From: Ruditapes philippinarum | Lineage: Eukaryota | Direction of reading: 5' to 3' | Assembly (NCBI RefSeq): GCF_026571515.1 | Contig: NW_026851983.1 | Coordinates: 1 to 60,307 of the forward strand | Length of the DNA: 60,307 nucleotides | Program-made: the position numbers and the translations under genes | In this document: one piece after another, positions 3,271 to 57,144 of the stretch | Layout of the letters: each line of letters opens with the position of its first letter | Numbering within the stretch: position 1 is the first letter of the stretch | The notes under the pieces: model-generated | Database searches by the model: none | Told to the model about the DNA's origin: nothing | Seen by the model: the letters and a program-made list of their open reading frames with translations, nothing else

Positions 3271-3408
3271 TCTGGAAAAAGTGTGATCCCTCTGAAGCAT
3301 AAATCACACCAAAATTACATGACAATTGCAGACTCGGTTTGATTGAGTCTTTACATGAGGGATAATGAAAAAGTGCAACATCACTCATGCCGCCCCTAGC
3401 ACCGGCTT
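3271..3408 (+). other. structured dispersed element, copy 1 (subfamily A)
   Basis: ttgcAGACTC-ggtttgatt-GAGTCT hairpin; CATGAGgGAT-aatgaaaaagtgcaac-ATCaCTCATG hairpin; then ccgcccctagcaccggctt. The upstream flank aligns with copy 3. Confidence 0.8.
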
Positions 3409-3482
3409 GAATTTAAACACTCCCAAAATGATGACTTTCTTAAGTATTGCCACCTATTATTATAAGTATTGGTAATATCATT

Positions 3483-3561
3483 GTCGGTTATCCACGGTAT
3501 ATATTCCGTACTTCACGGTATATTTTCCGCATGTACGGAATATATACAGTGGGTAACCGAC
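3483..3561. mobile_element. short foldback / MITE-like palindrome
   Basis: gtcggttatccacggtatatattccgtac ... gtacggaatatatacagtgggtaaccgac, a near-perfect inverted repeat. Confidence 0.6.
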
Positions 3562-5516
3562 GGTATGATAGTATTATGACAATTCTGTATTATTTTACGT
3601 TTGAAATAATATTTAAATGTTTTGCTATTAAATGTTGAGAAAAAAAGGACTTATGTAGGAATGCCAGTAACAACATCCTCACATGATAGAGCTAATCTGT
3701 TTCTTGACGAGATTCGAACATTAAGCGGCAAGAGGCGCGTGATTCGAAGTAAGGCCGCACACTGCACTGTGGTCTTCATCACGGTGTACTTAAAATGCAA
3801 CAATATATATGTAAATGTAAACTATATAGTTAAATATCAAAATGAACGATTTGTTATCATACAATGAAATAGCATTAAATCACGAAACCACTGTTTTAAA
3901 CTATAGTATCACAAATAACACAGATCTATAAGTCATGACACAATATCAATTAATTATGAAAATAAAACAAACTGTAGATAATAATTGACTGAGAGTTATA
4001 ATATCATCATAACTTTCAATGATAACGGTCGTTATCAACATGACTCTGCAGTTTTACATTGTCATTACACTGAAAACAAATGTTTGTAACCTCAGAAATA
4101 TATCAAAATTTGAGAAAAAAGGAAATTAAAGAATAGTAATAAATAACCTTTTATTTTAGATAGTCTATGACATATTTTCACCCTATTGGTGGTATAAATT
4201 AATATTTAATGAAATATCTAGCACACAAAATGATATACAAACATTTTGTTTACAAATTTTAACATATTAACGATGCCCACTTGCTGAATCAATCACGTTG
4301 GTTGTCTCATAAACTAATATTTTGTAATCCTATCCGAAGATTACATAATAAACATGTTAACATGTTATTTTACTTGAGGCCAGCATCTGTAGATTTGAAA
4401 TGACACCTTTTGTTTTTTCCAGATTTGCTACCCCTGTAGCAGCGCTATATATCTGTTACTTGTCAAACAAAATTTGACATTGTTATTTAAGTCTCCGCTG
4501 CGAGTAATGTGTAATCTTTCCTTTAATATTCATATTTTCATATGATATTCAATTTATTTTTCAATAATTTATTTCAAGTTTGTAAGACAATTAGCCCCCT
4601 TGGGACATCTGTCATCAACTTACATTTGCGATAAAAGCTTTTAACTTTCAAATTGCGATCCTAAATTTAAACGAATATAACATAAACAGAAATACTGATG
4701 AAACGCATTCATTCTTGTTATTTGAGATACGTAACTAGAAAACCTTGCTTCAAATTATCCGATACAATACTTTCATTGAACAAATAAGAATAATTAAGTT
4801 CTATCTGCAAGCTCTATCCCGTCAGTTTCTGCCTAAAGAAATAATTGTTTTTAGCATGGTAAATAATCGATGTTCAGAGACAAAACTTCGGACAAAGCAG
4901 ATTTTCGGATAAGTTATAATCCCTTAATAACATAGTTACTTGATTACTAAGTCATCATAAATATTTACAAATAGGCAATAAAGATGCCGTGCACGGCGAT
5001 TATTACACTAGCTTTCATTAGACGATGTTCCTCGATGTGGCATAAAGGATGCGTGTCATGAGACCATACATGTACGAGAAACGTTGTATCTGATCCCACG
5101 AGATGCGCTTAAAGCAATTCCTAGACAAAACACAGGTACTCTGCTTCTCTTATCTTTCCAAGTTTTATATGTAGCAAGAGGAGAAACTAACCTAACTATG
5201 TTTGTTTTTCCTTGAATTTAGGGCAGCTTTAATAGAAGCATATTTTGATACGAAAAATGTGTGGTTTAAAATGATACATGTTAAAAACGATGAAGTTTTG
5301 TCTTATCAAACTTTTTCAATCGAAAGAAGGTCTAGATAATTTAATTTTGTATCAAACAAGTGAAAACAATTTCCTGTAAATATTTTGTCTTAAACAATAC
5401 ATAGTGCGCCTCCAAGAGCAAGTTATATAAAATCGCGACATAGCCAGAACTTGAAGGCTGAATCATACAAGGAAACAAAAAAGTTCCCAGCAACAGCTTA
5501 TATGTCTACATACATC

Positions 5517-6090
5517 AATAAGAAACCTTGAAAAAACGTGAAACACGATCCATTAGAAACCTTGAAAAATGTCAAAAACGACACATTAGAAACCTTGAAA
5601 AAACCGTTAAACACGACACATTAGAAACCTTGAAAAACGTTAAACACGACATATTAGAAACATTGAAACCGTTAAGCACGACACATTAGAAACCTTGAAA
5701 AACATAAAACACGATACATTAGAAACCAACATTAAACACGACATATTAGAAACCTTGAAAAACGTTAAACACGACACATTAGAAACCTTGAAAAACGTTA
5801 AACACGACACATAAGACACTTTGAAAAACCATTAAATAATTAAATACGACACATTATAAACATTGAAAACGTTAAGCACGACACATTAGAAACCTTGAAG
5901 AACGTAAAACACCATCCATTAGAAACCTTGAAAAACGTTAAGCACGACACATTAGAAACATTGAAAACGTTAAGCACGACACATTAGAACCCTTGAAAAA
6001 CGTCTAACACGACACATTAGAAACCTTGAAAACCATTAAATACGGCCCATTAGAAACCTTGAAAAACGCAAAACACAACACATTAGAAAC
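5517..6090. repeat. minisatellite, ~31-32-bp unit
   Basis: About 18 head-to-tail copies of cattagaaaccttgaaaaacgttaaacacgaca, with no unique spacers. Confidence 0.95.
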
Positions 6091-6092
6091 TG

Positions 6093-6217
6093 TTTCAAGC
6101 TCGTTTTTATTGAGCCTTTGATGGTCTTTTCTGGTAAATGCAAAGTGTCTTTCATACCCCCTAGCACCGGCTTAAGAAGTCCTCGACATTAAGACGATGA
6201 AATGATGTTCATAGGAC
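6093..6217 (+). other. structured dispersed element, copy 2
   Basis: GCTC-gtttttatt-GAGC hairpin, ctggtaaatgcaa loop remnant, ccccctagcaccggcttaag, then a GTCCT...AGGAC hairpin. Confidence 0.75.
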
Positions 6218-7703
6218 GACGATCAATATAAACACCCAGTAAAATTGTGATAGTTTCAACTATTTCACATTTGCAACGTCATTTCTACGTTAAAATTTAT
6301 CGTTATATTCACATTGATATTCGTCAAAGCTTAATTTTTTCTAACTAAACTGCTTCAGCAAGCAAATTAAACATAATTTAGTGAACAAACTCCCTGCAAC
6401 ACCTGAAAATGAACACAATGCAATATATTGTGTTTACATAGCTACTAAATCTTCATATGTACAGGTGTTAAGAATTTAAATTAATTTGTTGCTCTGTTCA
6501 CACTATATTGCATTTAGAAGTCACGAGAAAATCGTGCAGTTTGTCAAGGCAAACTACCCGCCATATTGAAGTTCACAGGAACGAATCCCTCCAGCTGTTC
6601 CGCTTGTGTTATCGCCGCTATTATCAGTTAGATAAGCATCAAATACGTTTCATTTAGAACATACATCAATCTAATTGAAAGAATAAAAGCGATAATCTCA
6701 CATTTTAAATGAGATCATCTTTATTATGTTCTTTTGCCGAGTTTTAACGCTCCATTGATGCGATTACAGATAGCAAATATTTTGATTAGAGTAATTTTAA
6801 AGCATGTAATAACATCTATTTTCCTAAATATTGCGTATATCCGATAGTACAATTTTGATTTATGACATAGAGTCATGGTGATTTTTTTCTAATCGCTTTC
6901 GATGATCAAAGCAAAATAATAACAACAAATTGCCTTTTAAATAAAAACTACGTTCAATTAAAGTAATGAATGCGCTTAATCTATTTTCATGTCACACAGA
7001 CAGAATCTATGTCTTCTTGATTTTAATTTAATTAATAAATTCATGTGAATCATATTCAATTATGACATGTGTTGTGTTTGTTCTCTTGATATGTTTTCAA
7101 GATAATTAGTTATTTAATTTAGCTACTTTTACTTCAGCTTCTCTTTCTCGCTTATGCATTTCAATGCTTTAACCGTAGACCTTTACTAAAACCTTTGGCT
7201 ATGATCATGGCTATGTTTTTTTTAACCTGTTGGCTGTATTTTGAATAATTCATTTATGAGTATTGTTTTAGTTAAATCTGTTTAATCTTGACTATTGAAG
7301 TATACATTGTTATTTTATTATTAATGTTTGTAGTTGGCACTCTTTGATAAGTTGCTTCCAGTATAATTAAGTAATACACTTTGATTCCAGTTATTTTTCA
7401 CGTTAAAAAAAGAACAACATGACTTTGTTGTCATTTTTATTCCAATCATGATGTGTGTATCAAACTGTTCTACAGTAAAAACTTGAACTGAGACCTGTTA
7501 TTGGTAAAGTAGTTTATTCAGGAGAACACTAAATGAAATATGTTCCACTGTTTTGTTGTTTGTTTATGTAACAAAGTAAAATAAAATAGTATTTTCATAA
7601 AAAGCGAAAAATTGTTGGACAAAAAGTTCTCATTTTCCGGACGACGTTTTGGTATTTCTAACGACACATGAAAAACACAAATTACATGCAGGTCAGCCAT
7701 ATG

Positions 7704-7891
7704 GTACATACTTCATTGATTCCAGCACATTTAGTGTTGAAGACTGTATACCGCTTCAGCCGGTGCTAGGGGGCGTGAGAGATGTTGCGCTTTTACATTA
7801 TCTCTCACATACCACCCAAATCAAACCAAACCTGCAATTGTCATATAATATTGGTGTTTCCTTGCTTCCGAGGGATCTCCTCTTGTCCAGA
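7704..7891 (-). other. structured dispersed element, copy 3 (subfamily A, inverted)
   Basis: Reverse complement reads ttgcaggtttggtttgatt...GTGAGAGAT-aatgtaaaagcgcaac-ATCTCTCAC gccccctagcaccggctgaagc GGTATA...TGTACC. Confidence 0.8.
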
Positions 7892-10020
7892 TTTTAAAAC
7901 GCCCGTAAATAAATCAAACACAAGATTTGACCACTTTATTTTCGAAAACTATTTATCATGAACAGTATCTATCAAGTGGCATGGAGAAATAACAAGAGAT
8001 TATACATCTGCAATTGGGGTGCCCTTTGCACACACCCCTCCCTTTTTCTTTCAGCAAATTGTATTTCCCTTTTCTATAAAAACTTGCCTTTTTTCTCTTA
8101 TAAGGTAAGCGAGGGACCTTACCAACCGCCTCACACCTGGACTTAGTCGAAATCTTCATCACATTTCTAAACTATGGGACACCTGATCTAAATGAAACAA
8201 ATCTGCCTCTCACCTATTCTTTAATTTAATGGTCCGTAACGACATAAAATATCATTATACAATTGTACTAGATAATGTGTAAAATTAATGGCTGCCTCCG
8301 ACACAAATTTATTTTTTTAAATACGAAACTATGTAAATTGGAATCGATTAGTTTGCTTAACTCTATAAATACATTTAATTCGGGGTTAACAGGTACGAAG
8401 GAAACTTAACATAGATTTGGAAAAAAAGATAAACACTTTCTTAGGCAATATCGTTCATTACTCTAGAAATAATAATAATAATAATAAATAATAATAATAA
8501 TAAATACCACATTTATATAAATAACATTTCAAAAACTGCTATGGTCTTCTTAGTTCGGGAGAAGTGAGATAATAGTATTTAGGTTTTTCCGTATTAAAAG
8601 CAGGGTTGACATTTTCGGTTGTTTAAGATATTGAATAATTTTACATGTAACTGGAATATCTTGACAGTATTACAACTGACGCGCATGCGTCGCCTATGTT
8701 AGTGTTCTATCCAAATTGTATTGCGGCTAATTATGCTCATTCATTTCCGTTAGGCATTGAGTGTAACCCATGAATAACATTCAGTTGTTTTGATGGTACT
8801 TGGTCACCAGTCTTTGATCACAGGCCTCTCAAATATACCACATTTATTTCAATATGTACTTTCATTTGTACAGTGTTATCCGACCATTTGAAGTACTTAT
8901 ATATTATATAATTATTGTCCTTGCATATAATACAATGTTGTATTAGTAATATATAATAAATGCAATTCAGCCACTCTCATTGGGACATTCTGCGACTTAT
9001 TTAGTTGAATTTGCATACTTTCTGGAAAATATACATGAGTCCATAATTAATATCAACTGTCATTTCATTCTATTTCAGATTGAATGTTTAAAATGAAATA
9101 CGTTAATTAGTTCCAAATGAATTCTAATTTACAGATAGATTGAAAATTTAATACAATCAAGTCTGGCTTTTCGTTCAATTCAGCAATAGCGTGTTAAAGT
9201 TTTATACATATTCGATTTAATTATATGTAGGTAATGACGTTTTTATTTTCATAAATATTATTTATTACATATATTCTAATCAACATTAATTAAGAGATAT
9301 AAAACAGTGCATTTAGGACGTATCTGTTGTATACAGTGTTTATAACAGGAAAAAATGCTCTTTTTGATACACATGAGCCACATATTTTTTGTACATAAAA
9401 CATTGGTTTACCACGCAATTGTCATCGTCAATCTCAATAGACTTGTGCTAAATCGTTCTGTTTTTTTTTTCTGGGTTTTCTTACTTTCTTTTGTTGTTGT
9501 TGTTGTTGTTTTAATTAAAAATATTGCCGTTGTCATCTCAAAACGTTCTTATACATTCCAAAAATCTACATTTTTCACTGCAAATATTATAGACCCTACA
9601 TATACATGTATATGTCTGTAAGTTGAGTTTATATTTTTGTGTCACAAGTTACTCAAAATGTCGTATTGTCAATTGTAATTTGTGTGATGACCATTATATT
9701 TATGTGATAAGAAAATGATTGACCAATTTAAACAATCTTCATTTATATCGTTCTTGCAATAGTCGTTGTAGCTAGCATGTCCTAAAACATCACGTGACCG
9801 AAATCCCAATCATAACATTGCTGCTGATGTTCCTTTGCTTTTGTTTCATATTCCTGTCAATATATTTTTTATCAGTCGTATTTAACAATTGTACATCGAT
9901 AGTTAACAATTCAATCCTTTATTTCAGATTTACAGTTTACATGAAGTTATCTCATGATCTGATATAATCAAGAAATCAAACAAAGGTTACAGTATCTACA
10001 ATAATCCTCAGTTTGGAGGG

Positions 10021-10326
10021 GATAGAGAAAAATAGATACCTTGAAGAACGCCCAAAAGAGCAAAATTGAATATGTTGCAGGGTCTTTTCATGGACGGTAC
10101 TGGTAAGTGCAAGCTATCGTCCATGTCCCCTAGCACCGGCTTCAGTAGAATTCAACATTTAACGTTAAGGTTAAATGTTGAATTTTAACACATCCGCAGA
10201 TGTGTTTATGCGTCTGTTATCATGGAACTTTCAAGGTGACAAGTACGTGCCATTCCATTCACAGCGGCGTGTGGTTCCCCTAGTTAATAAATGAGTGTGC
10301 CCCAAAACAAAATGAAATTTTGAAAG
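10021..10326 (+). other. structured dispersed element, copy 4 (subfamily B, hairpin 1 deleted)
   Basis: ATGGACGGTA-ctggtaagtgcaagc-TATCGTCCAT, tcccctagcaccggctt, a 17-bp hairpin AGAATTCAACATTTAAC/GTTAAATGTTGAATTTT and AACACATC-cgca-GATGTGTT; colinear with 56819-57126. Confidence 0.85.
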
Positions 10327-10391
10327 GGGGACAGAGGTAACAAAACCTGCTGATACATATAACAGACAAAAAAAATCAAGGGAAAAAGTCG

Positions 10392-15115: not shown

Positions 15116-16281
15116 AATTATTCATTGTTAACTATTACAAAGGGGCTTACAAAAGACAAAAGTCTACAAAACAATGCAATTATAACAGATACAGTGTTTT
15201 AAATCTAACTAACATGCAAGAATAAAAATCTATAAAGATTTATTTTTTTAAGATAATGCCTTTATTCCTCATCTACATATCTACATATTCAATTAAGACG
15301 AATCGTCTCCATAAATCAGAATGCCCAGCTTTTATTATGTACTGCCTGAAGTTATGTTTATGTCTTAGCAAAACTATAATAAAACTGATAGAGATATGAA
15401 CAAAATCCATCACAGATGATATATAGAGTACAGAATACAGGTCCAAACATAATAACTTACAGCATGTAAAAGTTGATGCACGAAATATTGCTTGCGACGG
15501 ACATCAAACGTAAAACATTATACATGTATTATATCACAGATATATAAACAACGGATAGGAAACTCCGAAAATAGACGAGAGTCCGATTCAGACCCACAAT
15601 CCTTTGCGCGCTTCGGTTATAATCGGGCTTTCCCGCTAGTCTCCGATTTTCACGCTAGCTCCATGATTATATCATTACGTAACGGAACATGTGCTTTTTA
15701 TTATGAATTATAATTAAGTCATTAACGTAGTCTTCAAGACATCTTTTAAATCTTGAGTCTAGTAAATTACGGGGTTGCGCCATCTAGAAGGCGCTACAGA
15801 TTCATGTTTTACTTTGATCATTATGGTTATGTATGTACAGAGCTGGTAAATTGTTAAATTAAATATAATCTAATTACGCGAATATTCTGTAAGATTTTAT
15901 CAATTAACCGAATCTTTTTAAAAGAAGCATACAAATTAGGTTTCCGAGTCATTTTGACTGGATGAAATATGACAAAATAAATCTAAATTATAGTTTAACT
16001 TTAATGAGATTAACTTTTAGTACTTTCAGCTGCAAACATGGTTGGTTTTCCATTGAAGTAAACCTTTATTTTTATCATACAACATATGGTTCCCGGTTTG
16101 TCATCAACCGATCTTTTACATCTTCAATGATTAAAGCTATGTTAAGCTTTTCCATGTCAAACGCTTTATGAGATTATCAGATTACAGCAGACGATATGTA
16201 TTCAAACATTATGCATGTATTGTTTCACTGTAAATGTATCAAAGTCCTCCTCGTGAAATCAAAGCAGAAGAGATGTTTATA

Positions 16282-16417
16282 TTGCAGACTCGGTTTTACT
16301 GTGTCTTTTCTTTACAGATAATGTAATATGCTAAAATCTCTCAAGCTCCCTAGCACCGGCTGAAGCTGTAGTGTTGAACAATTAAAGTATTTGAATCCAT
16401 GATCCCGGATGACTACA
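16282..16417 (+). other. structured dispersed element, copy 5 (subfamily A)
   Basis: ttgcagactcggttttactgtgtc ... agataatgtaatatgctaaaatct ... ctccctagcaccggctgaagc TGTAGT...ACTACA. Confidence 0.75.
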
Positions 16418-36376: not shown

Positions 36377-36685
36377 TGAATATGTCTCTTCTAGTACACC
36401 ATATATTTTTAACTATGTTTACCGTAGCATTATAAAAAATACATGTAAGATGTCATAACAGCTAACTGTTTCTCTAGAGGATTGTATATGAAAGTGTTAA
36501 CTCAGAAAACTAAGTACATGCATCCTAAACAAGTGGTATGATTGAGATCGTGTGGTTTTTGACGAACATGTAAATCAACAAATGTTTTCTATTTCAAATT
36601 CTTTGCTAATGTCTTCCAATAAAACATACGTATAACCGGTTCCGATGCAGACCATTTGACTAATTTACATAACGAAGTTAAAATG

Positions 36686-36728
36686 GAGAGAAATAAGAAT
36701 CCCTCAAGAAAGCCCAACACGGCAAAGG
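36686..36728 (+). other. left-end fragment of the structured dispersed element
   Basis: gagagaaataagaatccctcaagaaagcccaacacggcaaa matches 56819-56861; absent from the paralogous site at ~42073. Confidence 0.7.
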
Positions 36729-38478: not shown

Positions 38479-38508
38479 CCGTCGGATTTTAATGAAAGCG
38501 ACTTAAAC

Positions 38509-40489: not shown

Positions 40490-40760
40490 GAAAAGAAGAA
40501 AAAAAGAAAGCCAAAAAAAAATAAATTGAAAATAGGGTTTTTTCGGTTTTTATAAAGAGGTGGGAGTGGGGTTTTTCAAAATTCCAAAAATTTCTGCCCG
40601 GCTAAAAGCATTTAATTTGGGGAAAATTTCTGAAAATTTGTATTTTAAAAACATTCCGGCGTTGAAGAAAAGAAATTTTAAAGAACACGAAAAGTGTTCC
40701 ATTCTTGAATGTGACGCCCTGGGGTTTCCCGTAAAAGAATGCCCCTGATTTTTAAAAAAA
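40490..40760 (+). other. garbled copy of the structured element inside a low-accuracy segment
   Basis: Positionally homologous to 54505-54787 but distorted by homopolymer runs (tttctgcccggctaaaagc for tactagcaccggcttaggc). Confidence 0.55.
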
Positions 40761-43631: not shown

Positions 43632-44366
43632 ACAAGTACCGTCTTTTGACTTTACAAAAATAGTCTTGTACGGAAATAACATACTTCGGGAAATCTTTAG
43701 AACTATTTTTATGTGCTATTACGGGGCTGAATATACGCAACATCTGGCTTTTTTTGCTTTTGTTCACACCAATTTAGATGAAAAAGGTTTGCTCAAATGA
43801 CTTGAACAGTTTTGTCTACCAGCTATTTGAATCATTTCAAAACGAATGGTGTGTGCACTTGCAGCACTCAAAACATTCTGACACCAAAGAGTAGTTCTTA
43901 TCGAAAGACAAAATTACAAAATCGTTCCCGTCTTGATCTTAATTAAATCTGCAATCTGAAACCATTTGATTTGTAAGCGATTTGCCACTCATGCTGAGGT
44001 TGTAGCACATATTTCAATACAAAAGTGTCTCGACATTCTGTCTAAACCAGTAGTGTTAAAGATATCTTTAAGACATAGACAGTGGGGAAATAAGAACATC
44101 AAAATGGTCCAAAACTGGAATTCACTGTAATGGCCGACCGAGGCTTTTAGTCGGTTCAATTAAATTCTCTCATACCGTGTCAAAGACTTGACACGCGTCA
44201 GAAAGAAATATTACAAAATGGTAACAAGTCTGATCGTCAACATGATATAAAATGTAGGTTAAAACCATATTTAGGAGCGAGCTATAAACTTTTCATCATG
44301 GCCTTATCTCACAAGTATTTGCATCATTATAAAAGGCCGACGGATTTTAATGAAAGCGACTTAAAC

Positions 44367-45587
44367 ATGGAGAGCAGACACGTACATGTAGTTTTTGTAG
44401 GATACATTATTTGGTTTCACACATTGCTTACTGCTGCTCGTTCCACAAATGGGGATACATTGAAAATGGTTCTCTCAGAACTTGAGGATTTAAAGACGAA
44501 GGTCAATACATGCGAGGAGAGACTGGTAATCAACGACCACAAGCTAATGGCGGTCACCAATGAACAGAGATTACTAGTAGCTAACATGGAAGAAAGACTT
44601 CTCGCTGCAGAGGAAAATCTTAAAACAACCGCAGAATTATATGAGAAAAAGTTAGCCAAGTCAGACAGTAAACTCCGTGCCGTTGAAAGAAAACTTACAG
44701 TATTTGAGGAGATGTACGGTCGCTTTACTAACAAAGGAGAGCCAATTGAAGACGTTAAAGAAACTGATTTGAACGTGAATACCACCGATTTTGACGGGGA
44801 AAATAGAAAACACAGTGCTGATGAAGAGAAGCTAGCAAACCTGAATGGGTTCCATGTTTCTGCAACAGTATATGACAGCACTTTAGGAGAATCTCTGTTT
44901 ACAGATACTGGCAATAACCACGGAGATATAAGGGAAACTAACAACATCGACAATACACGACGTTCATCTACTCAAAAATCAGAAAGGGGTAATAAGCTTA
45001 ATTTGCAGATAAATATCGTTTTGAAAAGTCTTATTCAATCATAAATCATTTAAAATGTTTTGATAGACAATATAAAATATAAATATGTATTTATATCTAC
45101 AGCAATGCCATGATAATGCAATAGCTTTTTTCTCATTTTAGCATCGGATCCCATGTATCATAAGCGACTTGTGAATCGAGCTGTCAACCATCGTGTTGCC
45201 TTCACAGCGACCTTATCAGCCGGCGCTACCGAACTTGGGAAACAGCACACAATTCCCTTTAATGCAGTTCTGTTAAACGAAGGCCAGGCATATGACGCTA
45301 TCACAGACACGTTCATATGTCCAGTAAACGGGATATATATCTTTCAATCAGCATTAATGAGTGATGGGGAGAAAGTTATCCAAACCGAAATCGTAAAAAA
45401 TGGTGTGCCTATTGGTAGAGTGTATGCGAAGGGTACAAGTTATGGATATGATCAGGGGTTTAATTCTGCAACTGTACAATGCAATAAAGGTGATCACGTG
45501 TGGGTCAGAGTACACCTTCATTATGGCACCAGCATGCATAATGATTTCTTTTCTTCGTTTTCTGGACACATCCTATGGGAAACATAA
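44367..45587 (+). CDS. C1q-domain-containing protein A2, 355 aa; exons 44367-44988, 45142-45587
   Basis: Intact paralog of A1 with the same phase-1 intron and gC1q motifs. Confidence 0.93.
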
Positions 45588-46087
45588 AAACTCTATTTCA
45601 ATTACTTTAATGTCCTTATCACTTTTTTAATTAGTGATTTGAAATGTATAATAGGCAAATACATGTATGTCTGGAATAACACATGTATATAATAAACATG
45701 CAGAGTCGCGAATTCTTTGGTGATTTTATTGACAATGACACAAAATCAACGAAACTGAGGACTATGAAGCAAAATATCTATTATATTATAATTTGGAGAC
45801 CTTTAAAGCTACATGCCTCCAGATAAGTTTAAATATTTCAATGAACGCAAACTTGAGACAAAAATTTAATAAGATTGTAGAAAAGTAAAAAGATTCAAGT
45901 AATAATTTACAAGTTATATGCTATGAATTTTCAGGATTTATAACTATATTTTTCATATTTTGACCCCTTTTTGGTAATTTACGTGTGTTGCTAGTTCCAA
46001 TGATAATGTGAAAAGTCCATGCCATGCCTACAAGCACATTCCTAACATTTGATTGATGAAGAACTCAAATTTAAATTTTGACAATGA

Positions 46088-46383
46088 AATAGAAAGAAAA
46101 GCACAGTCCCTAAGAACGCCAAAATTAAAATATAATTGAAAGTGGCTCGGTTTGATCAAGAGGCGGCAGTGGTTATTGCAAGCTACAGATATACTAGCAC
46201 CGGCTTAAGCATAATATGATGAAAATGGTGAAAAATTGTATTTAAAAACACCCGACGGTTTGTTCATACGGCAGTGATCGATATAACCTTCACTGTGGCA
46301 CGCACGTGCCATTCTATGACATGTGGCGTATGGTAACCAAGTAAAAAAAAGCATGAGTCTTAAATAAAATGAAATTTTGAAAG
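46088..46383 (+). other. structured dispersed element, copy 6 (decayed)
   Basis: ggctcggtttgat ... ggttattgcaagcta ... ctagcaccggcttaagc ... cacgtgccattc ... aaaatgaaattttgaaag. Confidence 0.75.
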
Positions 46384-46529
46384 ACACGATTCTTTATTAG
46401 TTTTATTTGTGTACTTAAAAAGTGAGGTCATCTATGGAGATTATCTATCCTATCACAAAAACGAAAAATTTGAAAAACAGAAACAACAGTCTACACATTA
46501 AAGTAACTGTGTTGTTTGTAAACAAAGTA

Positions 46530-47456
46530 TCCGAGTGCTTAGTACACCCCATCCCAGGGCAAGGCATATTTTTACCGCAAGGCTATAATTTGATCAAACT
46601 TTGTCGCTGTCCACTAGATGTTTTATACCCAAACATTATCAAAATTTAGTAATTTGACCTTAAAGGTCAAGGTCAGTTATGGCTTACATTCAAGGTTAGT
46701 CTGGTCATCTTAAAGGAACATTCCAAAGGATTGTAATGTCCAAGCATGAAGACAATTCATTCATTAACAATAAAGCAATAGCCACTTTGGTCCATTTTTA
46801 GGTATATTTTCTAAGTTTTCAAGGGCATGTTGACGCAAAATACGCCAATCACAAAAGCTTTTGACAGAAATGTTGGCATTATAGATATGCATATAGGAGA
46901 TGTTCTGGGCAATAAAATATCCGGAATAAAACAGTATACTAGTATTTCATCATCTTTTGTGACCTTGATATTGCATATATTGACCGAACTTACATGTGTC
47001 TCAGACGTAGTAATGAAAATGACCATTTGTATAACAAGCCATCAATAAATGATGACAAAATAGTCCTTATGCCAATCTTCATATTTTTACCTGAAATTTG
47101 ACCTCTATGCGTGACCTTGGCCTTGGCTGCAGGGACCTGAATTTTACGCGCGACACTCTGCCTAACAATGGTAAACATTTATGCCAAGTTATATTGAAAT
47201 TCCCTCAATGTGTAAACGTTTTGCTTCGGACAAGCGTTTTTCAATGAGCTCTAAGTGTAACCTTGACATTTAAGCCTAGAGTACAGCTGGCCCATGCAAG
47301 TGACACGGCTTGTCAAGTTGCCATAGTGGTCAATATTTCTATGTAATTTTAATAAAATCCCTCTATGTGTGAAGGAGATATACTCCGGATAAAATTGGAC
47401 TCCGTCCGCCCGCCTGTCCGACCTATAAAACGGCACGTTTTTGAAACAGGTGTATT
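46530..47456. mobile_element. HINE/Helentron-like 'tgaccttga' repeats (related pieces at ~41150-41570 and ~54930-55340)
   Basis: Recurrent tgacct/aaggtcaagg modules, an aacaag start and a (gtcc)n-like tract near 47400. Confidence 0.5.
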
Positions 47457-50332: not shown

Positions 50333-52565
50333 TTTTACTGTAAAGAAATAATGTCATTAAAGTATAACAAAGCTTCTTAAAGGAAATGAGAATTTATTGC
50401 CCTTTGTATAAAAATATACATCAAATTAACATAAGTAAATATTGAAATGAACACTTCAGTGATAAGGTAGATTAATCTAAGAACACAATATGGTAAGGCA
50501 CTTGTAACTTTATTAAAACAAAAAATAAAATAAACTGTTGCCTATTTAAATCAGCAAAAATTTATTCTATTTTTGAAACACAAATCTGAAGTACCACAGG
50601 TTGAGAACACAATGGCTACAAGTTCTAAGTCGTAACATGATTAACATGTGTGTTATGAAAGGGCCCTTAGAGCACAAATGAGAAATGAAAGTACATGTAT
50701 AATTTTTGATGGGTTTTATGTAGCACCAACACAACATAAGTCATATGGCCACTTTTCTGGTGGAGGAAAGCCTCAAGCAAAGGCGGGAACCCGAGTAGAA
50801 CCACAACTGAAAGGAACACATGCAAGGGCTAACATATTTGAAATACATGTAAAATACATAAACATATAGGAACACAAGAAGGTAAAGCATGAAGACTATG
50901 ATTTTGAACACAACAGTTACAACAAGTTCTTCATTACTAAAGAAGAACACAAGTTTCTATAATTTATAATACCTTAGAGTAAAGCTTATATACAAGTGGC
51001 AATCCCCTTAAAGTAAAGAATGTAAAAGTATAAACTTCAAATCTCTCTCCAAATGATATCTAGAAGAAATATATTAAGAACTGTGTGTTTCATCTTTATC
51101 ATTTCAGTTGTATAAGGCAGTAGAAAAACAAATTTTATTATACAGCATAATATTCCCGCATTTTTTTTTACTTTATATGTGTTGCATAATTTTTAAAGAA
51201 TCCAAAGACAATCATATACAGATTAATTCTGTCTATAAACTTATCTAATAGATGACTTTTTTACAAATTATTTAACACTATTTAAATCATTGAGCAGCTT
51301 TTTTACAAGTTATCTAACACTTTGTTAAAGCATTGTGCAAAGTCCAGGGAGGAAAACTGTATCAAACTTACACTGGCAGTGCAAGGCTTTATACATAAAT
51401 CTGGACAAATTAACTATTCTGCATCAAACTATGCTATAATCAATTGGTAGAAGTCTAATAATTATTTACTATAATTTGATTAGGTAATTGGGTCTTAGAA
51501 GAATAATGCGTGAGGTACAGCTGCAAAGCTTTGTAATTAATCTCTTAATGTAGTGAAAATTTAAGTGTCAGGTGTGTTAGAATCATCAATATATCAATCT
51601 TTTTGTTGAATACAAAAATTCAATTAAGTTTAAAAATTAATTGTAAAACAAATTCTATTCTATATTTTGTATCAAAATAATTTCATGCTGCAGTAAATGC
51701 ATTGCAGTAAGAAATTCTAATATATTTTGTTCAGAGATAAAATAAGCTTTAAAACAATTTTTCAGCTGTATATTGTGTGACAATTCATATAAACGGGAAT
51801 TGTAGTCGCTTAACAAGCTTTTAAAACATTCATTAATAATTACTTATGAATACTTTTGAAACAAATATATATTTGCCTATGATTATATTTAATGTTCTGA
51901 GCCAAGACTAAGGGTTTGCCGACCTTTTTAAGGTAAGGATACATGCCAAGAAAATGTCTGTCATTTCAACAAAATTTGAATTACATTCTCTACTACAGAA
52001 TTGTTTTGAATAATAAACAGCAGTAAGTTAAAACTTAAACCTAGTAAGAAATCAATCAAATGGAATGCAAAAGGTTAGGGGTTTTCTTTTTGTTTCACAA
52101 AATATTCCTCACTAACCCGTCTTGATCTTAATTAAATTTGCAATCTGAAAGCTTTGATTTTTAAGCGATTTGTCACTAATGCTTAAGTTGTAGCAGATAT
52201 TTCAATAAAAAGTGTCTAACATTGTATTCCCATGTTTTGTTCTAAACCAGTAGTGTTTAAGATATCTTTAAGAAATAGACAGTGGGGAAATAAGTACATC
52301 AAAATTGCCCAGACAGGAAATCACTGTAATGACCGACCGAGGCTTTTAGTCGGTTCAATTAAGTTCTCTCATACCGTATCAAAGCCTTGACACGCGTCAG
52401 AAAAATAATTTACAAAATGGTAACAAGCCTGATCGTCAACATGATAAAAAATGTAGGTTAAAACCATATTTAGGAGCGCCCTATAAACTTTTCCGCACGT
52501 CCTTATCTCACAACTATTTACATCATTATAAAAAGCCGACGGATTTTAATGGAAACGACTTAAAC

Positions 52566-53751
52566 ATGGAGAGCAGACACGTACACTTAGTTTGTTTAGG
52601 GTACATTATTTGGTTTCACACACTGCTTACTGCTGCTCGTTCCACAAATGGGGAAACATTGAAAATAGTTCTCTCAGAACTTGAAGATTTAAAGGTCAAT
52701 ACATGCGAGCAGAGACTGGGGATACACGACAACAAGTTAATGACGGTCACCTATGAACAGAAATTACTAGTAGCTACCATGGAAGAAAGAATTCTCGCTG
52801 CAGAGGAAAATCTTAAAACAACCACAGAATTATATGAGAAAAAGTTATCCAAGTCAAGCCGTTGAAAGAAAACTTAAAGTGTTTGAGGAGACATACGGTC
52901 GCTTAACTAACAAAGGAGGGCCAATTGAAGACGTTGAAGAAACTGATTTGAACAAGAATACCACCGATTTTGACGGGGAAAATAGAAAACACAGTGCTGA
53001 TAAAGGGAAGCTAGCAAACCTGAATGGGTTCCATGTTTCTGAAACAGTATATGACAGCACTTTAGAAGAATCTCTGTTGACAGATACTGACAATAACCAC
53101 GGAGTTATAAGGAAAACTAACAACATCGACAATACACGACGTTCATCTACTCAAAAATCAGAAAGGGGTAATAAGCTTAATTTGCAGATAAAGTCTTATT
53201 CAATCATAAATCATTTCAAAAGTTTTGGTAGACAATATAAAATATAAATATGTATTTATATCTACAGCATGCCATGATAATGCTTTAGTTTTTTTCTCAT
53301 TATAGCATCGGATCCCATATATCATAAGCGACTTGTGAATCGAGCTGTCAACCATCGTGTTGCCTTCACAGCGACCTTATCAGCCGGCGCTACCGAACTT
53401 GGGAAACAGCACACAATTCCCTTTAATGCAGTTCTGTTAAACGAAGGCCAGGCATATGACGCTATCACAAACACGTTCATATGTCCAGTGAACGGGATAT
53501 ACATGTTTCAGTCAGCTTTAATGAGTTATTTTGAGGAACATATCCAAACTGAAATCGTAATAAATGGTGCATGTATTGGTAGAATGTATGCGAAGGGTGC
53601 AAGTACTGGATATGATCAGGGGTTTAATTCTGCAACTGTACAATGCAATAAAGGGGATCACGTGTGGGTCAGAGTACACTATCATTATGGCACGAGCATG
53701 TTAAATGATTTATTTTCTTCGTTTTCTGGACACATCCTGTGGGAAACATAA
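52566..53751 (+). pseudogene. C1qDC gene A3 with exon-1 frameshift; exons 52566-53167, 53306-53751
   Basis: Net 14-nt loss at ~52857 (aagtcaagccgttg versus aagtcagacagtaaactccgtgccgttg); the gC1q exon is intact. Confidence 0.82.
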
Positions 53752-54504
53752 AAAACTCTCTTTCAATTACTTTAATGTCCTTATCACTTTTTTCAATTAG
53801 TAATTTGAAATATACAATAAATAAATACATGTATGTTTGGAATTACACATGTATATAATAAACATACAAAGACGCGAATCCTTTTGTGATTTTATTGACA
53901 ATGACACAAAACCAACAAAACTGAGCACTTTGAAGACAAATATCTCTTATATCATATTTGGAGACATTTCAAAGCTACAGGCCTCCAGATAAGTTAAAAT
54001 ATTTCAATAAATGCAAGCTTGAGAAGAAATTTACTAAGATTGTAGAAAAATTAAAAGATTCAAGATTCAAGTAATAATATACATGTTATATGTGATAAAT
54101 GACTGAATTTTCAGGATTATAAGTATATTTCTACTGCGTTACGAACGTAGTAAGGGTTATATTTTCATATTTTGACATCTTTTTGGTAATTTACGTGTGT
54201 TGCAAGTGCCATTGATAATGTGAAAATTGCTTCCTTTTGGTTATTTCACAATATCATACATTTAAATACATTTTTAAAATTTCATGAAAATTGGCATAAA
54301 TCTGGTGGAATGCTGCTTTAAGTCGTATCCCAACCCATACAAGCACAGTGTGTTAACTTGAGTCCAAGTATAAAACAAAATCGACAATGGTGCCTATTCA
54401 TGAATAATTTTAAGCTACGATCCATGCCATGCCTACAAACACAGCACTTACATTTGATTGAAGAAGAATTCAAATTTAAATTTAGAAACATTGTTTTGAC
54501 AACG

Positions 54505-54787
54505 GAATAGAGAGAATAGCGCAGTCCCTAAAGAACGCCACAATTTAAATATAATTGAAAGTAGTGCTGGCTCGGTTTGATTAATAGGCGGTAGTGGTTA
54601 TTGCAAGCTACAAATATACTAGCACCGGCTTAGGCATATGATGAAAATGGTGAAAATTTGTATTTAAAACATCCGGCGTTGATCGATAGAACTTTCATTG
54701 TGGCACGCACGTATCATTCTATGACATTTGGCGTTTGGTTACCAAGTAAAAGAATGCATGAGTCTTAAATAAAATGAAATTTTGAAA
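54505..54787 (+). other. structured dispersed element, copy 7 (segmental duplicate of copy 6)
   Basis: tgctggctcggtttgatt ... ttgcaagcta ... ctagcaccggcttaggc. Confidence 0.75.
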
Positions 54788-56353
54788 GACACGATTCTTT
54801 ATTAGTTATATTTGTGTACTTAAAAAAAGTGAGGTCATCTATAGAGATTATCTATCCTATTACAAAAACGGAAAATTTGAAAAACAAAACAACAGTTTAC
54901 ACATTAAAGTAACAGTGTTGTTTGTAAACAACGTATCCGAGTGCTTAGTACACACCATCCCAGAACAAGGCATATTTTGACCCCAAGGCTTTAATTTGAT
55001 CAAACTGTGTCGCTGTCCACTAGATAATGTTTTATAACCAAGCATGACAAAAATTATTAATTTGACCTTAAAGGTCAAGGTCAGTTATGACTTACAGTCA
55101 AGGTTAGTCTGCTCATCTTAATTAAAGGAACATTTCAAAGGATTGTAATGTCCAAGTATGAAGACAATTCTTTCATTAACAATAAAACAATAACCACTTT
55201 AGTCGATTTTTAGGTATATTTTCTAAGTTTCCAAGGGCAATGTTGTCGCAAAATACGCCTGTCACAAAAGCTTTCGACAGAGATGTGGGCATTATAGATA
55301 TGCATATAGGAGATTTGATCTGGGCAATATAATATCCGGACATAATTAGTAAAATGTATATTTCATCATCTTTTGTGACCTTGACATTGCATTTATTGAT
55401 CTTAATTACATGTGTTTCAGCCTTAGTAATGATAATAAACATTTGTGTTACGATTAAGGCCCCCACGGTTATACGTTTAAACGGCTTCGTTTCGATTTTC
55501 ATTCCTAAACGTTTACGATATTTTTACCGTTTAATCGAAATAACCATATTGTCTTACAAAATATCTTAATCATTGCCAGTAATCACGGCTTTTATCAATT
55601 CCAGTTTGTTTATTCCAAATTAAAAATGGAAAATATGTGTTTACAACCGTCCACACAGCATCACCGTGCAATAATTGCTTATGGCATAATACATTTTTGG
55701 AAAAGTTGATTTTCCTTTGATCTTTCAAAAGAGCGAAATGGGGATACCATGCAGAAAATGTGTGCCGACACAATCGTGATGAGCCCTGAACATCTACGAT
55801 CCCTAAATAAATGTTGACTAAATGGTCCTTATACAACGTTACAGTCGTTGAAAATGCTACTAAAATGTCGAAAGAAAATAAATCGTTATTGGACTTTAAA
55901 AAGTATTCCCCAATGAAATTAAGACCTAAAATGTTACACTAGTTTATCAGTCCCAGTCACTAGAGTCAAACATCTGATTCCACGTTAATCTTATTGGAGA
56001 CAAACTGATAAAATCCCGATCCAAAATGAAACTGGTGTGAAAACCATTGGTTTTGAAGAATCAAAACGTTTTAATGAGACATTATGCCAATCAAACCAAG
56101 AGTACATGTATATATTGAATCAACAGGTGAAAGTCAAAATAAAGTTTACTTTTTGCCGTAACTCCTTTCATTTTCATAATTTAGTTAACAAGAACGACAA
56201 GTAACTCATGTGCACAAGGAAATGTATGTAAATACTCATGCTTAGTACACTATTGTACGTTTTAAAAAAATCATGTAAGAAAGGGACCTTTAAAAACATT
56301 TGTTTCAGACCAGACAGGAAATAACTGTTAAACACTTTTTACTCGCTACACTT

Positions 56354-56617
56354 TGAGCCGTCCGGTTAGCTCAATAAAGTAGGGCGTTTTACTGGTCGAT
56401 TCCGGACCGCGCATGTCACTTTCGTTGTGTTTGATCACACTATTCCTTTGCCCTAGCATGTACAAATGTTATCTTGCTAAAGTGAAGGCAACTAGTGCTG
56501 GTAAACTGTGTGACAGCTTGCCCAGGCACGATGTGGTGGCAGAACTATTCTCGGGTAAATTCAATGTGACTCGCTGTCATAATCCAGAGTGTAAACTACC
56601 AACACCACCACCACCAC
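56354..56617 (+). mobile_element. MetaSINE-like SINE (duplicate of 48101 copy)
   Basis: Same head and tail, with an internal deletion. Confidence 0.72.
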
Positions 56618-56818
56618 TTCAACTTGGTGTTCCCCCATAAACACCTTTCAACGTAGTTTTCCTTTCTGATCAAGACCATGTGTCACTAACAAATTGATAA
56701 TTAGCGTAATTTACAATATGATAAAAACTGTAGGTTAAAACTATATTAAGAAGCACTGTCAACGAGTTCTTACTCCGATAAAAATGCGATATCATAAATA
56801 GCCACTAGTCGGAATGAA

Positions 56819-57126
56819 TAGAGAAAATAAGAATCCCTAAAGAATGTCCAACACAGCACAATTGATAATGTTGCAGGCTCGGTTTGATTGAGCCTGCTCA
56901 TGGACGGTACTGTCAAGTGAAACTACCGTCCACGCCCCCTCGCACCGGCTTAAGCAGAATTCAACATTTAATATGAACTGGTACAATTTTGAATTTAAAA
57001 ACATCCGCAGATGTGTTCATATGGCGGTCATCCTGGAACCTTTAATGTGACACGTAAGTGCCATTCCATGAAAAGCGGCATATGGTCCCCAAGTTAAAAA
57101 AATGCGTGTGCCCTAATCGAGAAAAC
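56819..57126 (+). other. structured dispersed element, copy 8 (best preserved, ~308 bp), located between TATA-like box and ATG of gene B2
   Basis: GCAGGCTC-ggtttgatt-GAGCCTGC; TGGACGGTA-ctgtcaagtgaaac-TACCGTCCA; gccccctcgcaccggcttaagc; flanked by AATGAA on both sides. Confidence 0.85.
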
Positions 57127-57144
57127 AATGAAAACGACCTAAGC

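What the first reader, a model, noticed from the sequence alone, without database searches (positions are those of the whole stretch)
3271..57126. Unnamed dispersed element with near-invariant CTAGCACCGGCT core and covarying multi-hairpin structure
Seen: eight copies (cores at 3326, 6093, 7757 minus, 10075, 16282, 46144, 54565, 56871) share the order TTGCAG - P1 (loop GGTTTGATT) - P2 (loop xTGnnAAGTGCAA) - GCCCCCTAGCACCGGCTT - P3, although some copies have lost or degraded a stem. Stems differ but still pair. P1 is GACTC/GAGTC versus GGCTC/GAGCC. P2 is GTGAGAGAT/ATCTCTCAC versus CATGAG.GAT/ATC.CTCATG versus ATGGACGGTA/TATCGTCCAT. P3 has unrelated sequences in copies 2, 3, 4 and 5 (GTCCT/AGGAC, GGTATA/TGTACC, AGAATTCAACATTTAAC/GTTAAATGTTGAATTTT, TGTAGT/ACTACA). 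Loops and the linker are the conserved parts. I see no tRNA head, poly(A) or microsatellite tail, TIRs or ORF. Inference: conserved loops with compensatory stems indicate selection on a folded RNA or ssDNA, such as an undescribed ribozyme, structured ncRNA or the cis-element of a novel non-autonomous mobile family. I cannot match it to hammerhead, HDV, twister, pistol, tRNA or snRNA consensus.
Basis: partly seen in the sequence, partly recalled or inferred. Interest (0 to 1): 0.9.

Follow-up and report, generated by a model that had tools for sequence, protein, structure and literature searches.

The report
Structured end of biv-TRIM clam repeats
The "unnamed" hairpin element is the conserved, folded end of a very abundant bivalve repeat already published as biv-TRIM (plus a 630-bp relative), and its copy structure suggests it spreads by reverse transcription of multi-unit RNA, not as the miniature LTR element it was named for.

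Summary
CTAGCACCGGCT occurs 8 times in the window (0.03 expected) and 22,454 times in the 1.4-Gb genome. Its flanking hairpins covary.

The element is not unnamed. Its 283-bp form matches biv-TRIM (Satovic et al. 2019, PMC6934838): the published primers and inner-domain motif map onto my consensus. A 630-bp family, which includes the best window copy at 56818-57130, shares both unit ends with it.

What I add:
- Every insertion has one fixed end, in a T-run. The other end falls anywhere, 59 to 1914 bp away.
- Units join head to tail, and I found no regular target duplication.
- The strand opposite the published orientation folds much better (283 unit: -107 vs -69 kcal/mol).

This fits 5'-truncated reverse transcripts of multimeric RNA, with the motif as a 3' recognition module. 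It contradicts the LTR/TRIM model.

I found no hammerhead core, Rfam ribozyme or tRNA head. RNA-seq showed low, embedded, unstranded signal and no discrete ends.

Other first-stage notes in this scan had already flagged the 284-bp and 630-bp repeats on other DNA of this genome.

The parts
56818..57130 (-). c8. This is the best-preserved window copy of the 630-bp family: the first 313 bp counted from the fixed end, 94.9% identical to the family consensus. The motif reads on +; the inferred functional strand is -.
56874..56896 (-). P1 hairpin of c8: 7-bp stem CAGGCTC/GAGCCTG with the conserved 9-nt loop GGTTTGATT.
   Evidence: helix 3: 2 pairs with changes on both sides
56899..56934 (-). P2 hairpin of c8: 11-bp stem. 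In most copies the loop carries AAGTGC, which is complementary to GCAC in the linker (a possible pseudoknot). In c8 the loop has decayed to GTGA.
   Evidence: helix 2: 5 pairs with changes on both sides
56939..56950 (-). Near-invariant linker 12-mer. Here it reads CTCGCACCGGCT, one mismatch from the consensus.
   Evidence: 22,454 exact copies in the genome
3268..3410 (-). c1. A 283-bp-family (biv-TRIM) copy covering units 1-141 from the fixed end, 89.5% identical to the consensus. It is truncated just after the 12-mer.
6049..6190 (-). c2. An old 630-like copy, 73% identical to the consensus.
7713..7894 (+). c3. A 283-family copy (positions 1-184, 78% identity) and the only window copy with the motif on the - strand. 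The inferred functional strand is +.
10022..10371 (-). c4. A 630-family copy (positions 1-391, about 79% identity) in which the P1 hairpin has been deleted.
16225..16413 (-). c5. A diverged 283-like copy, 74% identical over positions 58-195. The fixed-end tail has decayed, so the left boundary is approximate.
36683..36726 (-). A 44-bp stub of the 630 family (positions 1-43 from the fixed end, 93% identity).
46087..46364 (-). c6. A decayed 630-like copy lying inside a 3-4 kb segmental repeat.
54507..54769 (-). c7. The duplicate of c6, in another copy of the same segmental repeat.
40540..40720 (-). A third, strongly decayed duplicate of the c6/c7 insertion, in the oldest copy of the segmental repeat. 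The 12-mer is no longer recognisable and the boundaries are approximate.

Best explanation
The motif is the conserved, folded 3'-terminal module of a superfamily of short non-coding mobile repeats of bivalves. One form is the published biv-TRIM (283-bp unit). The other is a 630-bp relative.

Most likely mechanism:
- Head-to-tail arrays are transcribed on the strand complementary to CTAGCACCGGCT.
- The RNA folds into a 5' hairpin domain and a large 3' domain. A long-range helix closes the 3' domain, which contains a small hairpin (loop CUYAAGC), the linker GGUGCUAGGGGGC, P2 and P1.
- The reverse transcriptase of an unidentified autonomous element (a Penelope-like element or a LINE) recognises this module.
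- It primes on the U-run that lies 14-16 nt after the closing helix and copies back through one or more units.
- It falls off at random, leaving 5'-truncated, sometimes multi-unit insertions without poly(A).

Shown: the fixed and random ends, the tandem wrap-around, the covarying helices, the strand asymmetry of folding and the identity with biv-TRIM.

Inferred: an RNA intermediate, recognition by a reverse transcriptase, and the identity of the partner.
For: 1. Family identity. The only paper in the library that holds the 12-mer is the biv-TRIM paper. Its primer TDR-R and inner motif TGATCCCAAAGGAC each map on my 283 consensus with 1 substitution, and TDR-F maps with 4. All three are collinear, and the period equals their TDR plus inner domain (units).

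2. Abundance. There are 22,454 exact 12-mers against 45 for the control pattern.

3. One fixed end. It reads ..CTCTATTTT(A) in the 630 family and ..CCAGA(A)TTTT(T) in the 283 family, on the complementary strand, in more than 100 copies.

4. The other end is continuous. Lengths run from 59 to 1914 bp (630 family) and 62 to 1165 bp (283 family), with no peak at unit length. Copies wrap head to tail through 1 to 3 or more units.

5. The insertion ends do not coincide with the published TDR borders. Flank scans showed no regular short target duplication.

6. The complementary strand folds better. The 283 unit gives -107.4 kcal/mol (z -8.3) against -69.4 (z -1.5). The 630 unit gives -195.0 (z -7.0) against -177.0 (z -6.1).

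7. Both families share one architecture. The closing-helix 5' strand starts at nt 85-87, and its 3' strand ends 14-16 nt before the 3' end. The core CCUU/AGGG, with its U·G pair, is kept, while neighbouring pairs change on both sides between the families.

8. P1, P2 and P4 covary. G·U pairs number 44 on this strand against 26 on the other.

9. Copies are found inserted into other elements: a Helentron ORF, a LINE and a Naiad remnant.
Against: - No autonomous element carrying the module was found. Four canonical Penelope-like loci lack it in about 4 kb of 3' flank. The search could not be widened.
- The RNA evidence is weak. In two RNA-seq runs the family makes up about 0.01% of reads. Both read directions are equal, 86% of reads run on into unlike sequence, and no ends pile up.
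- Target duplications, expected for target-primed reverse transcription, were seen convincingly only once: 34 bp in L049, with 68 bp of extra sequence.
- G·T pairs also form in single-stranded DNA, so the strand asymmetry does not prove RNA.
- The covariation rests mainly on two large families plus a few old lineages. It therefore represents few independent events.
Confidence: 0.62

Rival explanations
1. It is a true TRIM, as published: a miniature LTR retrotransposon with two terminal direct repeats around an inner domain, moved by the integrase and reverse transcriptase of an LTR element. Under this reading the tandems and solo repeats arise by recombination.
For: This is the published interpretation. 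It rests on TDR-inner-TDR clones, a purine-rich heptamer before the TDR, and arrays of the form TDRx_I(x-1). A GGGGCGA-like stretch sits at the matching place in the 630 unit.
Against: - In this genome no insertion starts or ends at a TDR border. One end is always a T-run about 47 bp inside the 'TDR' (TDR-F maps at 237-256 of the 283-bp unit), and the other end is random.
- There are no TG..CA ends and no regular short duplication.
- The authors themselves found no PBS and no partner.
- The better-folding strand is opposite to the published orientation.
Confidence: 0.04
2. It is a non-autonomous rolling-circle DNA element (Helitron/Helentron-like). Under this reading the hairpins are single-stranded-DNA signals near a fixed terminus, tandems arise by read-through of the terminator, and insertion occurs at T-rich sites without duplication.
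For: The copies show head-to-tail multimers, no regular target duplication, a fixed end flanked by T and hairpins close to that end. Helentrons are present in this genome: a RepHel-APE ORF lies in L049. Bivalve satellite-like repeats are known to ride on Helentrons (discussion in PMC6934838).
Against: - The one adjacency to a Helentron ORF is an insertion into it. It is bracketed by a 34-bp direct repeat that includes the ORF's stop.
- There is no 5' TC or 3' CTRR terminus and no inverted sub-terminal repeats.
- The far end is spread continuously over more than 1.9 kb. This looks like limited processivity rather than use of alternative DNA signals.
Confidence: 0.12
3. It is a retrozyme-like element with a new self-cleaving ribozyme. 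The conserved pseudoknot-capable core would cut multimeric transcripts into units that circularise. Rolling-circle reverse transcription of the circles would then give the multi-unit, 5'-truncated copies.
For: - The units are tandem, the loops and linker are invariant while the stems covary, and the loop GCAC(U) can pair with the linker (G)GUGC.
- The RNA fold is compact and highly paired.
- Fewer RNA reads than DNA reads cross the unit junction. The depth ratio across it is 0.06-0.08 in RNA against 0.18 in the DNA-like run.
- Naiad Penelope-like elements, abundant in bivalves, lack hammerheads (PMC8557442).
Against: - There is no hammerhead core and no Rfam ribozyme match.
- No place was found where RNA molecules begin or end.
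- Expression is low and mostly embedded in other transcripts, unlike the abundant circular RNAs of known retrozymes.
- The fixed end lies about 55-120 nt away from the conserved core, not in it.
Confidence: 0.07
4. The short copies are the heavily 5'-truncated 3' ends of one or more autonomous LINE or Penelope-like elements whose 3' UTR contains these tandem units. Under this reading there is no separate non-autonomous family.
For: The fixed 3' end, the random 5' end and the absence of poly(A) are what strongly truncating LINE/PLE families produce. In R. philippinarum the median locus is only 126 bp.
Against: - None of about 100 copies in hand continues into coding sequence.
- Copies wrap from unit end to unit start for up to 3 units here and up to 58 units in the literature.
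- Two families with unrelated middles share both unit ends. This fits self-contained units better.
Confidence: 0.15

Closest known systems
biv-TRIM (Satovic et al. 2019, Sci Rep 9:19962, PMC6934838)
   Same: It is the same sequence family as the 283-bp unit. The primers and inner motif map onto it, the period is the same, and it shows tandem arrays, a very high copy number and mostly sub-unit fragments. No PBS and no partner were found for it.
   Different: The paper orients it on the other strand and models it as an LTR-type element. It does not describe the fixed T-run end, the continuous truncation, the covarying hairpins and closing helix, or the 630-bp relative that shares both unit ends.
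Metazoan non-LTR retrozymes / Penelope-like pLTR derivatives (Cervera & de la Pena 2020, PMC7229834; Li et al. 2026 preprint 10.64898/2026.07.22.740005)
   Same: These are also short non-coding units in head-to-tail tandems with compact RNA folds, and they are presumed to be mobilised by a Penelope-like reverse transcriptase.
   Different: They are defined by a type-I hammerhead ribozyme and abundant circular RNAs. Here no hammerhead core exists on either strand, and no circular or discrete RNA was seen.
Naiad-type Penelope-like elements (Craig et al. 2021, PMC8557442)
   Same: They show partial tandems, strong 5' truncation and no hammerhead, and they dominate bivalve genomes. A Naiad-type remnant is present in L057.
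   Different: Naiads are 3.4-4.4 kb coding elements that prefer (TA)n targets. I could not show any shared sequence between a Naiad 3' end and this module.
Stringent-type LINE/SINE 3' tails (for example eel UnaL2/UnaSINE1; from my own knowledge)
   Same: In both, a conserved 3' stem-loop with covarying stems and a conserved loop is recognised by the partner's reverse transcriptase, is shared by otherwise unrelated non-autonomous families, and is followed by a short terminal tract used for priming.
   Different: SINEs have a Pol III head and are single units. These elements have no tRNA, 5S or 7SL head, carry internal T4 runs and form multimers.

Membership tests
biv-TRIM sequence family | Sequence match to the published TDR primers and to the conserved inner-domain motif TGATCCCAAAGGAC | tested here: met
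   On the 283 consensus, TDR-R maps at 126-145 (1 substitution), the inner motif at 182-195 (1 substitution) and TDR-F at 237-256 (4 substitutions). All lie on the same strand and in the published order. The 630 family matches only TDR-R and the unit ends.
biv-TRIM sequence family | A period of about 280-300 bp (TDR 202-218 bp plus inner domain 77-80 bp), with tandem arrays and many sub-unit fragments | tested here: met
   Copies are spaced 283 bp apart in arrays. Copy lengths range from 62 to 1165 bp.
TRIM / LTR retrotransposon (class) | Insertions are bounded by the two terminal direct repeats, with TG..CA-type ends and a 4-6 bp target duplication | tested here: not met
   All copies start at a T-run inside the 'TDR' and stop at arbitrary positions. 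No regular duplication was found.
TRIM / LTR retrotransposon (class) | A primer binding site complementary to a tRNA next to the 5' repeat | not tested
   The authors could not identify one. I did not repeat the search.
Retrozyme (hammerhead-bearing) | A hammerhead catalytic core (CUGANGA ... GAAA) within three helices | tested here: not met
   No CUGANGA occurs on either strand of either consensus dimer. Rfam hammerhead models give no hit, even at E<=10.
Retrozyme (hammerhead-bearing) | Abundant unit-length circular RNA | tested here: inconclusive
   About 0.01% of the RNA-seq reads read from runs X23 and X24 belong to the family. The signal is unstranded, 86% of reads run on into unlike sequence, and there are no end pile-ups. 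The libraries were not designed to detect circles.
SINE | A Pol III head derived from tRNA, 5S or 7SL RNA | tested here: not met
   ARAGORN finds no tRNA-like sequence in five loci. There is no Rfam hit to 5S, 7SL or tRNA. Several internal T4 runs in the unit would stop Pol III.
Helitron / Helentron non-autonomous element | Defined 5' and 3' termini (TC...CTRR, or asymmetric inverted repeats plus a palindrome), with insertion between A-T or T-T and no duplication | tested here: not met
   Only one end is defined, and no TC/CTRR or sub-terminal inverted repeats are present. The T-rich flank and the lack of duplication are compatible with this class. The neighbouring RepHel-APE ORF in L049 is a target of the insertion, not part of the element.
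Penelope-like (Naiad) non-autonomous derivative | Sequence shared with the 3' end or pLTR of an autonomous PLE | not testable with these tools
The protein search returned only fragments of 442 aa or fewer. Four canonical PLE loci lack the motif.
Penelope-like (Naiad) non-autonomous derivative | Partial tandems and strong 5' truncation | tested here: met
   Shown. The features are as described for Naiads in PMC8557442.
Known self-cleaving ribozymes (twister, pistol, hatchet, HDV-like, hairpin) | A match to the family covariance model | tested here: not met
   No such family appears at E<=10 on 156-1301-nt queries covering both strands. The whole-genome twister-P5 search was uninformative because only 80 of 14,721 candidates were scored.

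The most novel reading that the evidence does not exclude
biv-TRIM and its 630-bp relative are not LTR elements. They would instead be a hammerhead-less counterpart of retrozymes: multimeric or circular structured RNAs mobilised by Naiad-type Penelope-like elements, which also lack hammerheads. Their invariant pseudoknot-capable core (GGUGCUAGGGGGC plus the P2 loop) would be either the Naiad reverse transcriptase's recognition module or a new self-cleaving motif.
Probability: 0.12. Interest if true: 0.8.

Novelty: new member of a known kind. Interest (0 to 1): 0.35.

Why it matters
The published name places this very abundant bivalve repeat among LTR elements, although no PBS, partner or mechanism was found. 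It has about 22,000 core copies in this genome and makes up about 0.75% of the reads read from the DNA-like run X21.

The copy anatomy shown here points to a different mode of spread. It also gives a concrete, testable RNA model: a definite strand, the helices and a priming tract. That matters in three ways:
- Repeat annotation of clam, mussel and oyster genomes would need to change.
- The claims of horizontal transfer built on this family would need a second look.
- It bears on what replaces the hammerhead in the Penelope-like elements that dominate bivalve genomes.

If no special partner or activity emerges, this is an ordinary non-autonomous retroelement with a well-conserved 3' recognition structure.

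Tried and rejected
**RNA family and ribozyme searches**
- Rfam on the whole window at gathering threshold gave nothing.
- Rfam at E<=10 on 401, 1301, 1001 and 156 nt gave only chance hits such as PYLIS_3, snoU2_19 and SNORD43.
- The whole-genome twister-P5 search was uninformative.
- I had noticed a twister-like look (AAGCCGG...AGGGGGC and a CUYAAGC loop). No model supports it, so I dropped it.
- No hammerhead core was found.
- ARAGORN found no tRNA.

**Helentron lead**
- The ORF beside a copy in L049 is Pif1-helicase plus APE. The copy is an insertion into that ORF, so I rejected the lead.
- A LINE (L048) and a Naiad remnant (L057) next to copies are likewise targets of insertion or lie in the opposite orientation.

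**Target duplications**
- Two apparent long direct repeats (L017, L052) proved to be host tandem repeats.

**Partner search**
- The GIY-YIG family search listed 139 sites, but the loci could not be cut out.
- Four canonical PLE loci were fetched and lack the motif.
- A search of protein representatives with the Naiad RT piece returned only short fragments.

**Reads**
- Run X21 is labelled RNA but behaves like DNA. Both read directions are equal, loose ends carry GATC, and depth is about 10,000-fold. I used it only as a DNA-like control.
- The 'goes back 630' joints in that table arise because I laid a circularly permuted unit. They are not evidence of circles.

**Other**
I redid the step from references.
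- Earlier-findings look-ups by sequence returned nothing.

Full report

The 12-mer CTAGCACCGGCT occurs at 3396, 6161, 7758(-), 10130, 16350, 46194 and 54619, and with one mismatch at 56939. That is 8 matches against 0.03 expected. An alignment of the eight sites with flanks shows that similarity extends far beyond the hairpins.

In the whole assembly (1.41 Gb, 15,874 contigs) the exact 12-mer occurs 22,454 times. The reversed control pattern occurs 45 times. The assembly gap at 18426-18572 lies about 2 kb from the nearest copy and plays no role. I did not try to fill it.

**2. What the copies are**

A search of the genome with the best window copy (56800-57160) gave thousands of candidates. 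All scored matches start at the same base and are 92-95% identical.

Reading the flanks shows two things:
- The left end, in the motif's orientation, is fixed.
- The sequence continues to the right for a different distance in every copy. It wraps from the end of a 630-bp unit into the start of the next, for one to at least three units.

The window copies c1 and c3 belong to a second family with a 283-bp unit that behaves the same way. The two families have unrelated middles but homologous unit ends.

Measured from the fixed end, copy lengths are spread continuously. They run from 59 to 1914 bp in the 630 family and 62 to 1165 bp in the 283 family, with no peak at unit length.

On the complementary strand the fixed end reads ...CTCTATTTT(A) or ...CCAGA(A)TTTT(T). 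The boundary is fuzzy by a few T's and occasionally runs one to four bases further.

Scans of the flanks found no regular target duplication. Two long 'repeats' were host tandem repeats. One copy, in L049, is bracketed by a 34-bp direct repeat plus 68 bp of extra sequence.

Within the window:
- c6 and c7, plus a decayed copy near 40.6 kb, are one old insertion that was copied with a 3-4 kb segmental repeat.
- A 44-bp stub lies at 36683-36726.

**3. It has a name**

The only paper in the library that contains the 12-mer is Satovic et al. [quoted passage not shown] On my 283-bp consensus, the TDR-R primer and the conserved inner-domain motif each map with one substitution, and TDR-F maps with four. 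All three appear in the published order. The period equals their TDR (202-218 bp) plus inner domain (77-80 bp).

The paper reports:
- 27,489 loci in Ruditapes philippinarum, with a median length of 126 bp;
- arrays of up to 58 units;
- transcripts in TSA;
- presence in 11 bivalve species;
- no PBS, no autonomous partner and 'no clear mechanism'.

The only other paper that mentions biv-TRIM does so once, in passing. The 630-bp family shares the TDR-R region and both unit ends but is not described there.

Other first-stage notes in this scan had already flagged a '284-bp tandem repeat' and a '~630-bp dispersed/tandem repeat' elsewhere in this genome.

**4. Which strand, and what fold?**

I built consensus units from 54 copies (283 family) and 80 copies (630 family). 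The strand complementary to the motif, which is also opposite to the published orientation, folds much better:

| Unit | Complementary strand | Motif strand |
|---|---|---|
| 283 bp | -107.4 kcal/mol (z -8.3 vs dinucleotide shuffles) | -69.4 (z -1.5) |
| 630 bp | -195.0 (z -7.0) | -177.0 (z -6.1) |

On that strand both families share one plan:
- a 5' hairpin domain at about nt 10-77, with apical loop GUAAAA;
- a long-range closing helix whose 5' strand begins at nt 85-87 and whose 3' strand ends 14-16 nt before the 3' end;
- inside it, a small hairpin with loop CUYAAGC, the linker GGUGCUAGGGGGC, P2 (11 bp) and P1 (7 bp);
- a single-stranded U-rich tail.

The closing helix keeps a CCUU/AGGG core that includes a U·G pair. 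The adjoining pairs differ on both sides between the families. It carries 3 G·U pairs in the 283 unit. Its 5' strand is the 'conserved inner-domain segment' of the paper.

On a 22-sequence alignment, the small hairpin, P2 and P1 pair in 84.2% of cells, against 23-39% with slid partners. Seven pairs change on both sides (36 cells), one P2 pair shows four Watson-Crick types, and 0 of 500 shuffles reach the observed score. G·U pairs number 44 on this strand and 26 on the other.

The conserved P2 loop (GCACU) can pair with the linker (GGUGC). Both are nearly invariant, so this pseudoknot is untested by covariation.

A caveat applies to all of this. The covariation rests mainly on two large families and a few old lineages, so it represents few independent events.

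**5. What it is not**

- **Known RNA families.** No Rfam family reaches threshold. At E<=10 on queries as short as 156 nt, no ribozyme, snRNA, 5S, 7SL or tRNA model appears.
- **Hammerhead.** There is no CUGANGA core on either strand of either dimer.
- **tRNA-like head.** ARAGORN finds none.
- **TRIM.** The model fails on copy anatomy (section 2).
- **Helentron.** A Helentron-type ORF (Pif1 helicase plus APE) lies next to a copy in L049. It is the target of that insertion, not its parent.
- **Other neighbours.** A LINE in L048 and a Naiad-type Penelope remnant in L057 (GIY-YIG upstream of RT) are likewise interrupted by copies or oppositely oriented.

**6. RNA evidence**

Twenty runs from 13 studies hold the stretch, and four raw RNA-seq runs of the species were offered. 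I laid a 630-nt stretch with the unit junction in its middle.

Run X21 is labelled RNA but behaves like DNA. Both read directions are equal, loose ends carry GATC, depth is about 10,000-fold and 0.75% of the reads read belong to the family. I used it only as a control.

Runs X23 and X24 gave the following:
- about 0.01% of the reads read belong to the family;
- the two read directions are equal;
- 86% of laid reads run on into unlike sequence, meaning the copies are embedded in other transcripts;
- there is no place where molecules begin or end.

Depth falls across the unit junction more steeply in RNA (to 0.06-0.08) than in the DNA-like run (to 0.18). That is compatible with many explanations. 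So the copies are transcribed at a low level. Neither the strand nor a discrete or circular RNA is shown.

**7. Mechanism**

Several features are the signature of 5'-truncated reverse transcripts of a template longer than one unit:
- a fixed end in a U/T-run;
- a continuously distributed far end;
- precise head-to-tail wrap-around;
- no poly(A);
- a conserved, covarying fold placed just upstream of the fixed end on the better-folding strand.

The module would be the site where the reverse transcriptase binds. The U-run would be where a nicked A-rich target primes. The template could be a multimeric transcript of an array or a circle.

This is how Penelope-like elements and stringent LINE/SINE pairs behave. 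Craig et al. 2021 (PMC8557442) describe partial tandems and strong 5' truncation for Naiads, which lack hammerheads and dominate bivalve genomes. I put 0.62 on this reading.

The rivals are:
- 3' ends of an autonomous element rather than a separate family (0.15);
- a rolling-circle DNA element (0.12);
- a new ribozyme-bearing retrozyme-like element (0.07);
- a true TRIM (0.04).

**8. What could not be done**

The partner was not identified.
- Four canonical Penelope loci fetched before that lack the motif.
- A search of 1.84 billion protein representatives with the Naiad RT piece from L057 returned only fragments of 442 aa or fewer.

Other first-stage notes claim 'twister-like' motifs in Naiad 3' ends. 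I could test only that this module matches no twister model.

**9. Verdict**

The element is a known repeat family (biv-TRIM) plus a new 630-bp member. The covarying multi-hairpin core is best read as its 3' cis-acting RNA module on the complementary strand. The ribozyme idea has no support so far.

The useful new points are the copy anatomy that contradicts the TRIM model and an explicit RNA architecture shared by the two families.

Noticed in passing
L049:1755-3185 (- strand): A 477-aa open frame has a Pif1/UvrD-type helicase C-terminus followed by an Exo_endo_phos (APE) domain. That is the Helentron RepHel-endonuclease arrangement. Its last 34 bp are duplicated on both sides of a 283-family insertion, together with 68 bp of unexplained extra sequence.
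   Followed up: partly
L057:390-2830 (- strand): This is a remnant of a Naiad-type Penelope-like element. A GIY-YIG nuclease (YVGQTGRSL...) lies upstream of an RT that carries the motif RYLDD. The remnant has frameshifts and an internal duplication, and a 283-family copy is inserted in the opposite orientation at 1480-1635.
   Followed up: partly
L085-L088: Four different Penelope-like elements have the GIY-YIG domain at the C-terminal end of the ORF (the canonical type). They are mutually almost unalignable at the DNA level. None has the 12-mer core in its 3' flank, although L085 has an unrelated-looking 283-family insertion about 530 bp downstream of the stop.
   Followed up: partly
L048:697-3068 (- strand): A LINE with an APE domain and an RVT_1 domain is split by a 283-family copy inserted in the same orientation, between the two domains.
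   Followed up: no
window 38055-40861, 43927-47030, 52113-55446: A 3-4 kb segment is present three times at 82-87% identity. Each copy carries long + strand open frames (for example 38224-39141, 44151-45041, 52350-53748) with no Pfam match. Two further long ORFs without a Pfam match lie at 21367-22671 and 34895-36373.
   Followed up: partly
window 1-8000 vs contig C180 of the same assembly: Contig C180 carries a second version of this region. It is 97% identical over 3230-4000 and 84% identical over 7100-7900, and it has a shorter version of copy c3. It is probably the other haplotype or a recent duplication.
   Followed up: no
run X21: This public run is labelled paired-end RNA-Seq but behaves like genomic DNA cut at GATC. 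Both read directions are equal, the repeat has about 10,000-fold depth, and loose ends begin or end in GATC. It may be a mislabelled Hi-C-type library.
   Followed up: no
window, all copies: Seven of the eight independent insertions have the motif on the + strand, which is the strand of nearly all long open frames in the window. If the functional strand is the complement, the copies lie antisense to the local genes, as is usual for retroelements in introns. The numbers are too small for a test.
   Followed up: no
L033:~2330-2420 and L023:1326-1502: Pairs of 630-family copies lie tail to tail. Their fixed ends face each other and are either 26 bp apart or abutting. This could reflect repeated use of one T/A-rich target on both strands, or a by-product of integration.
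   Followed up: no
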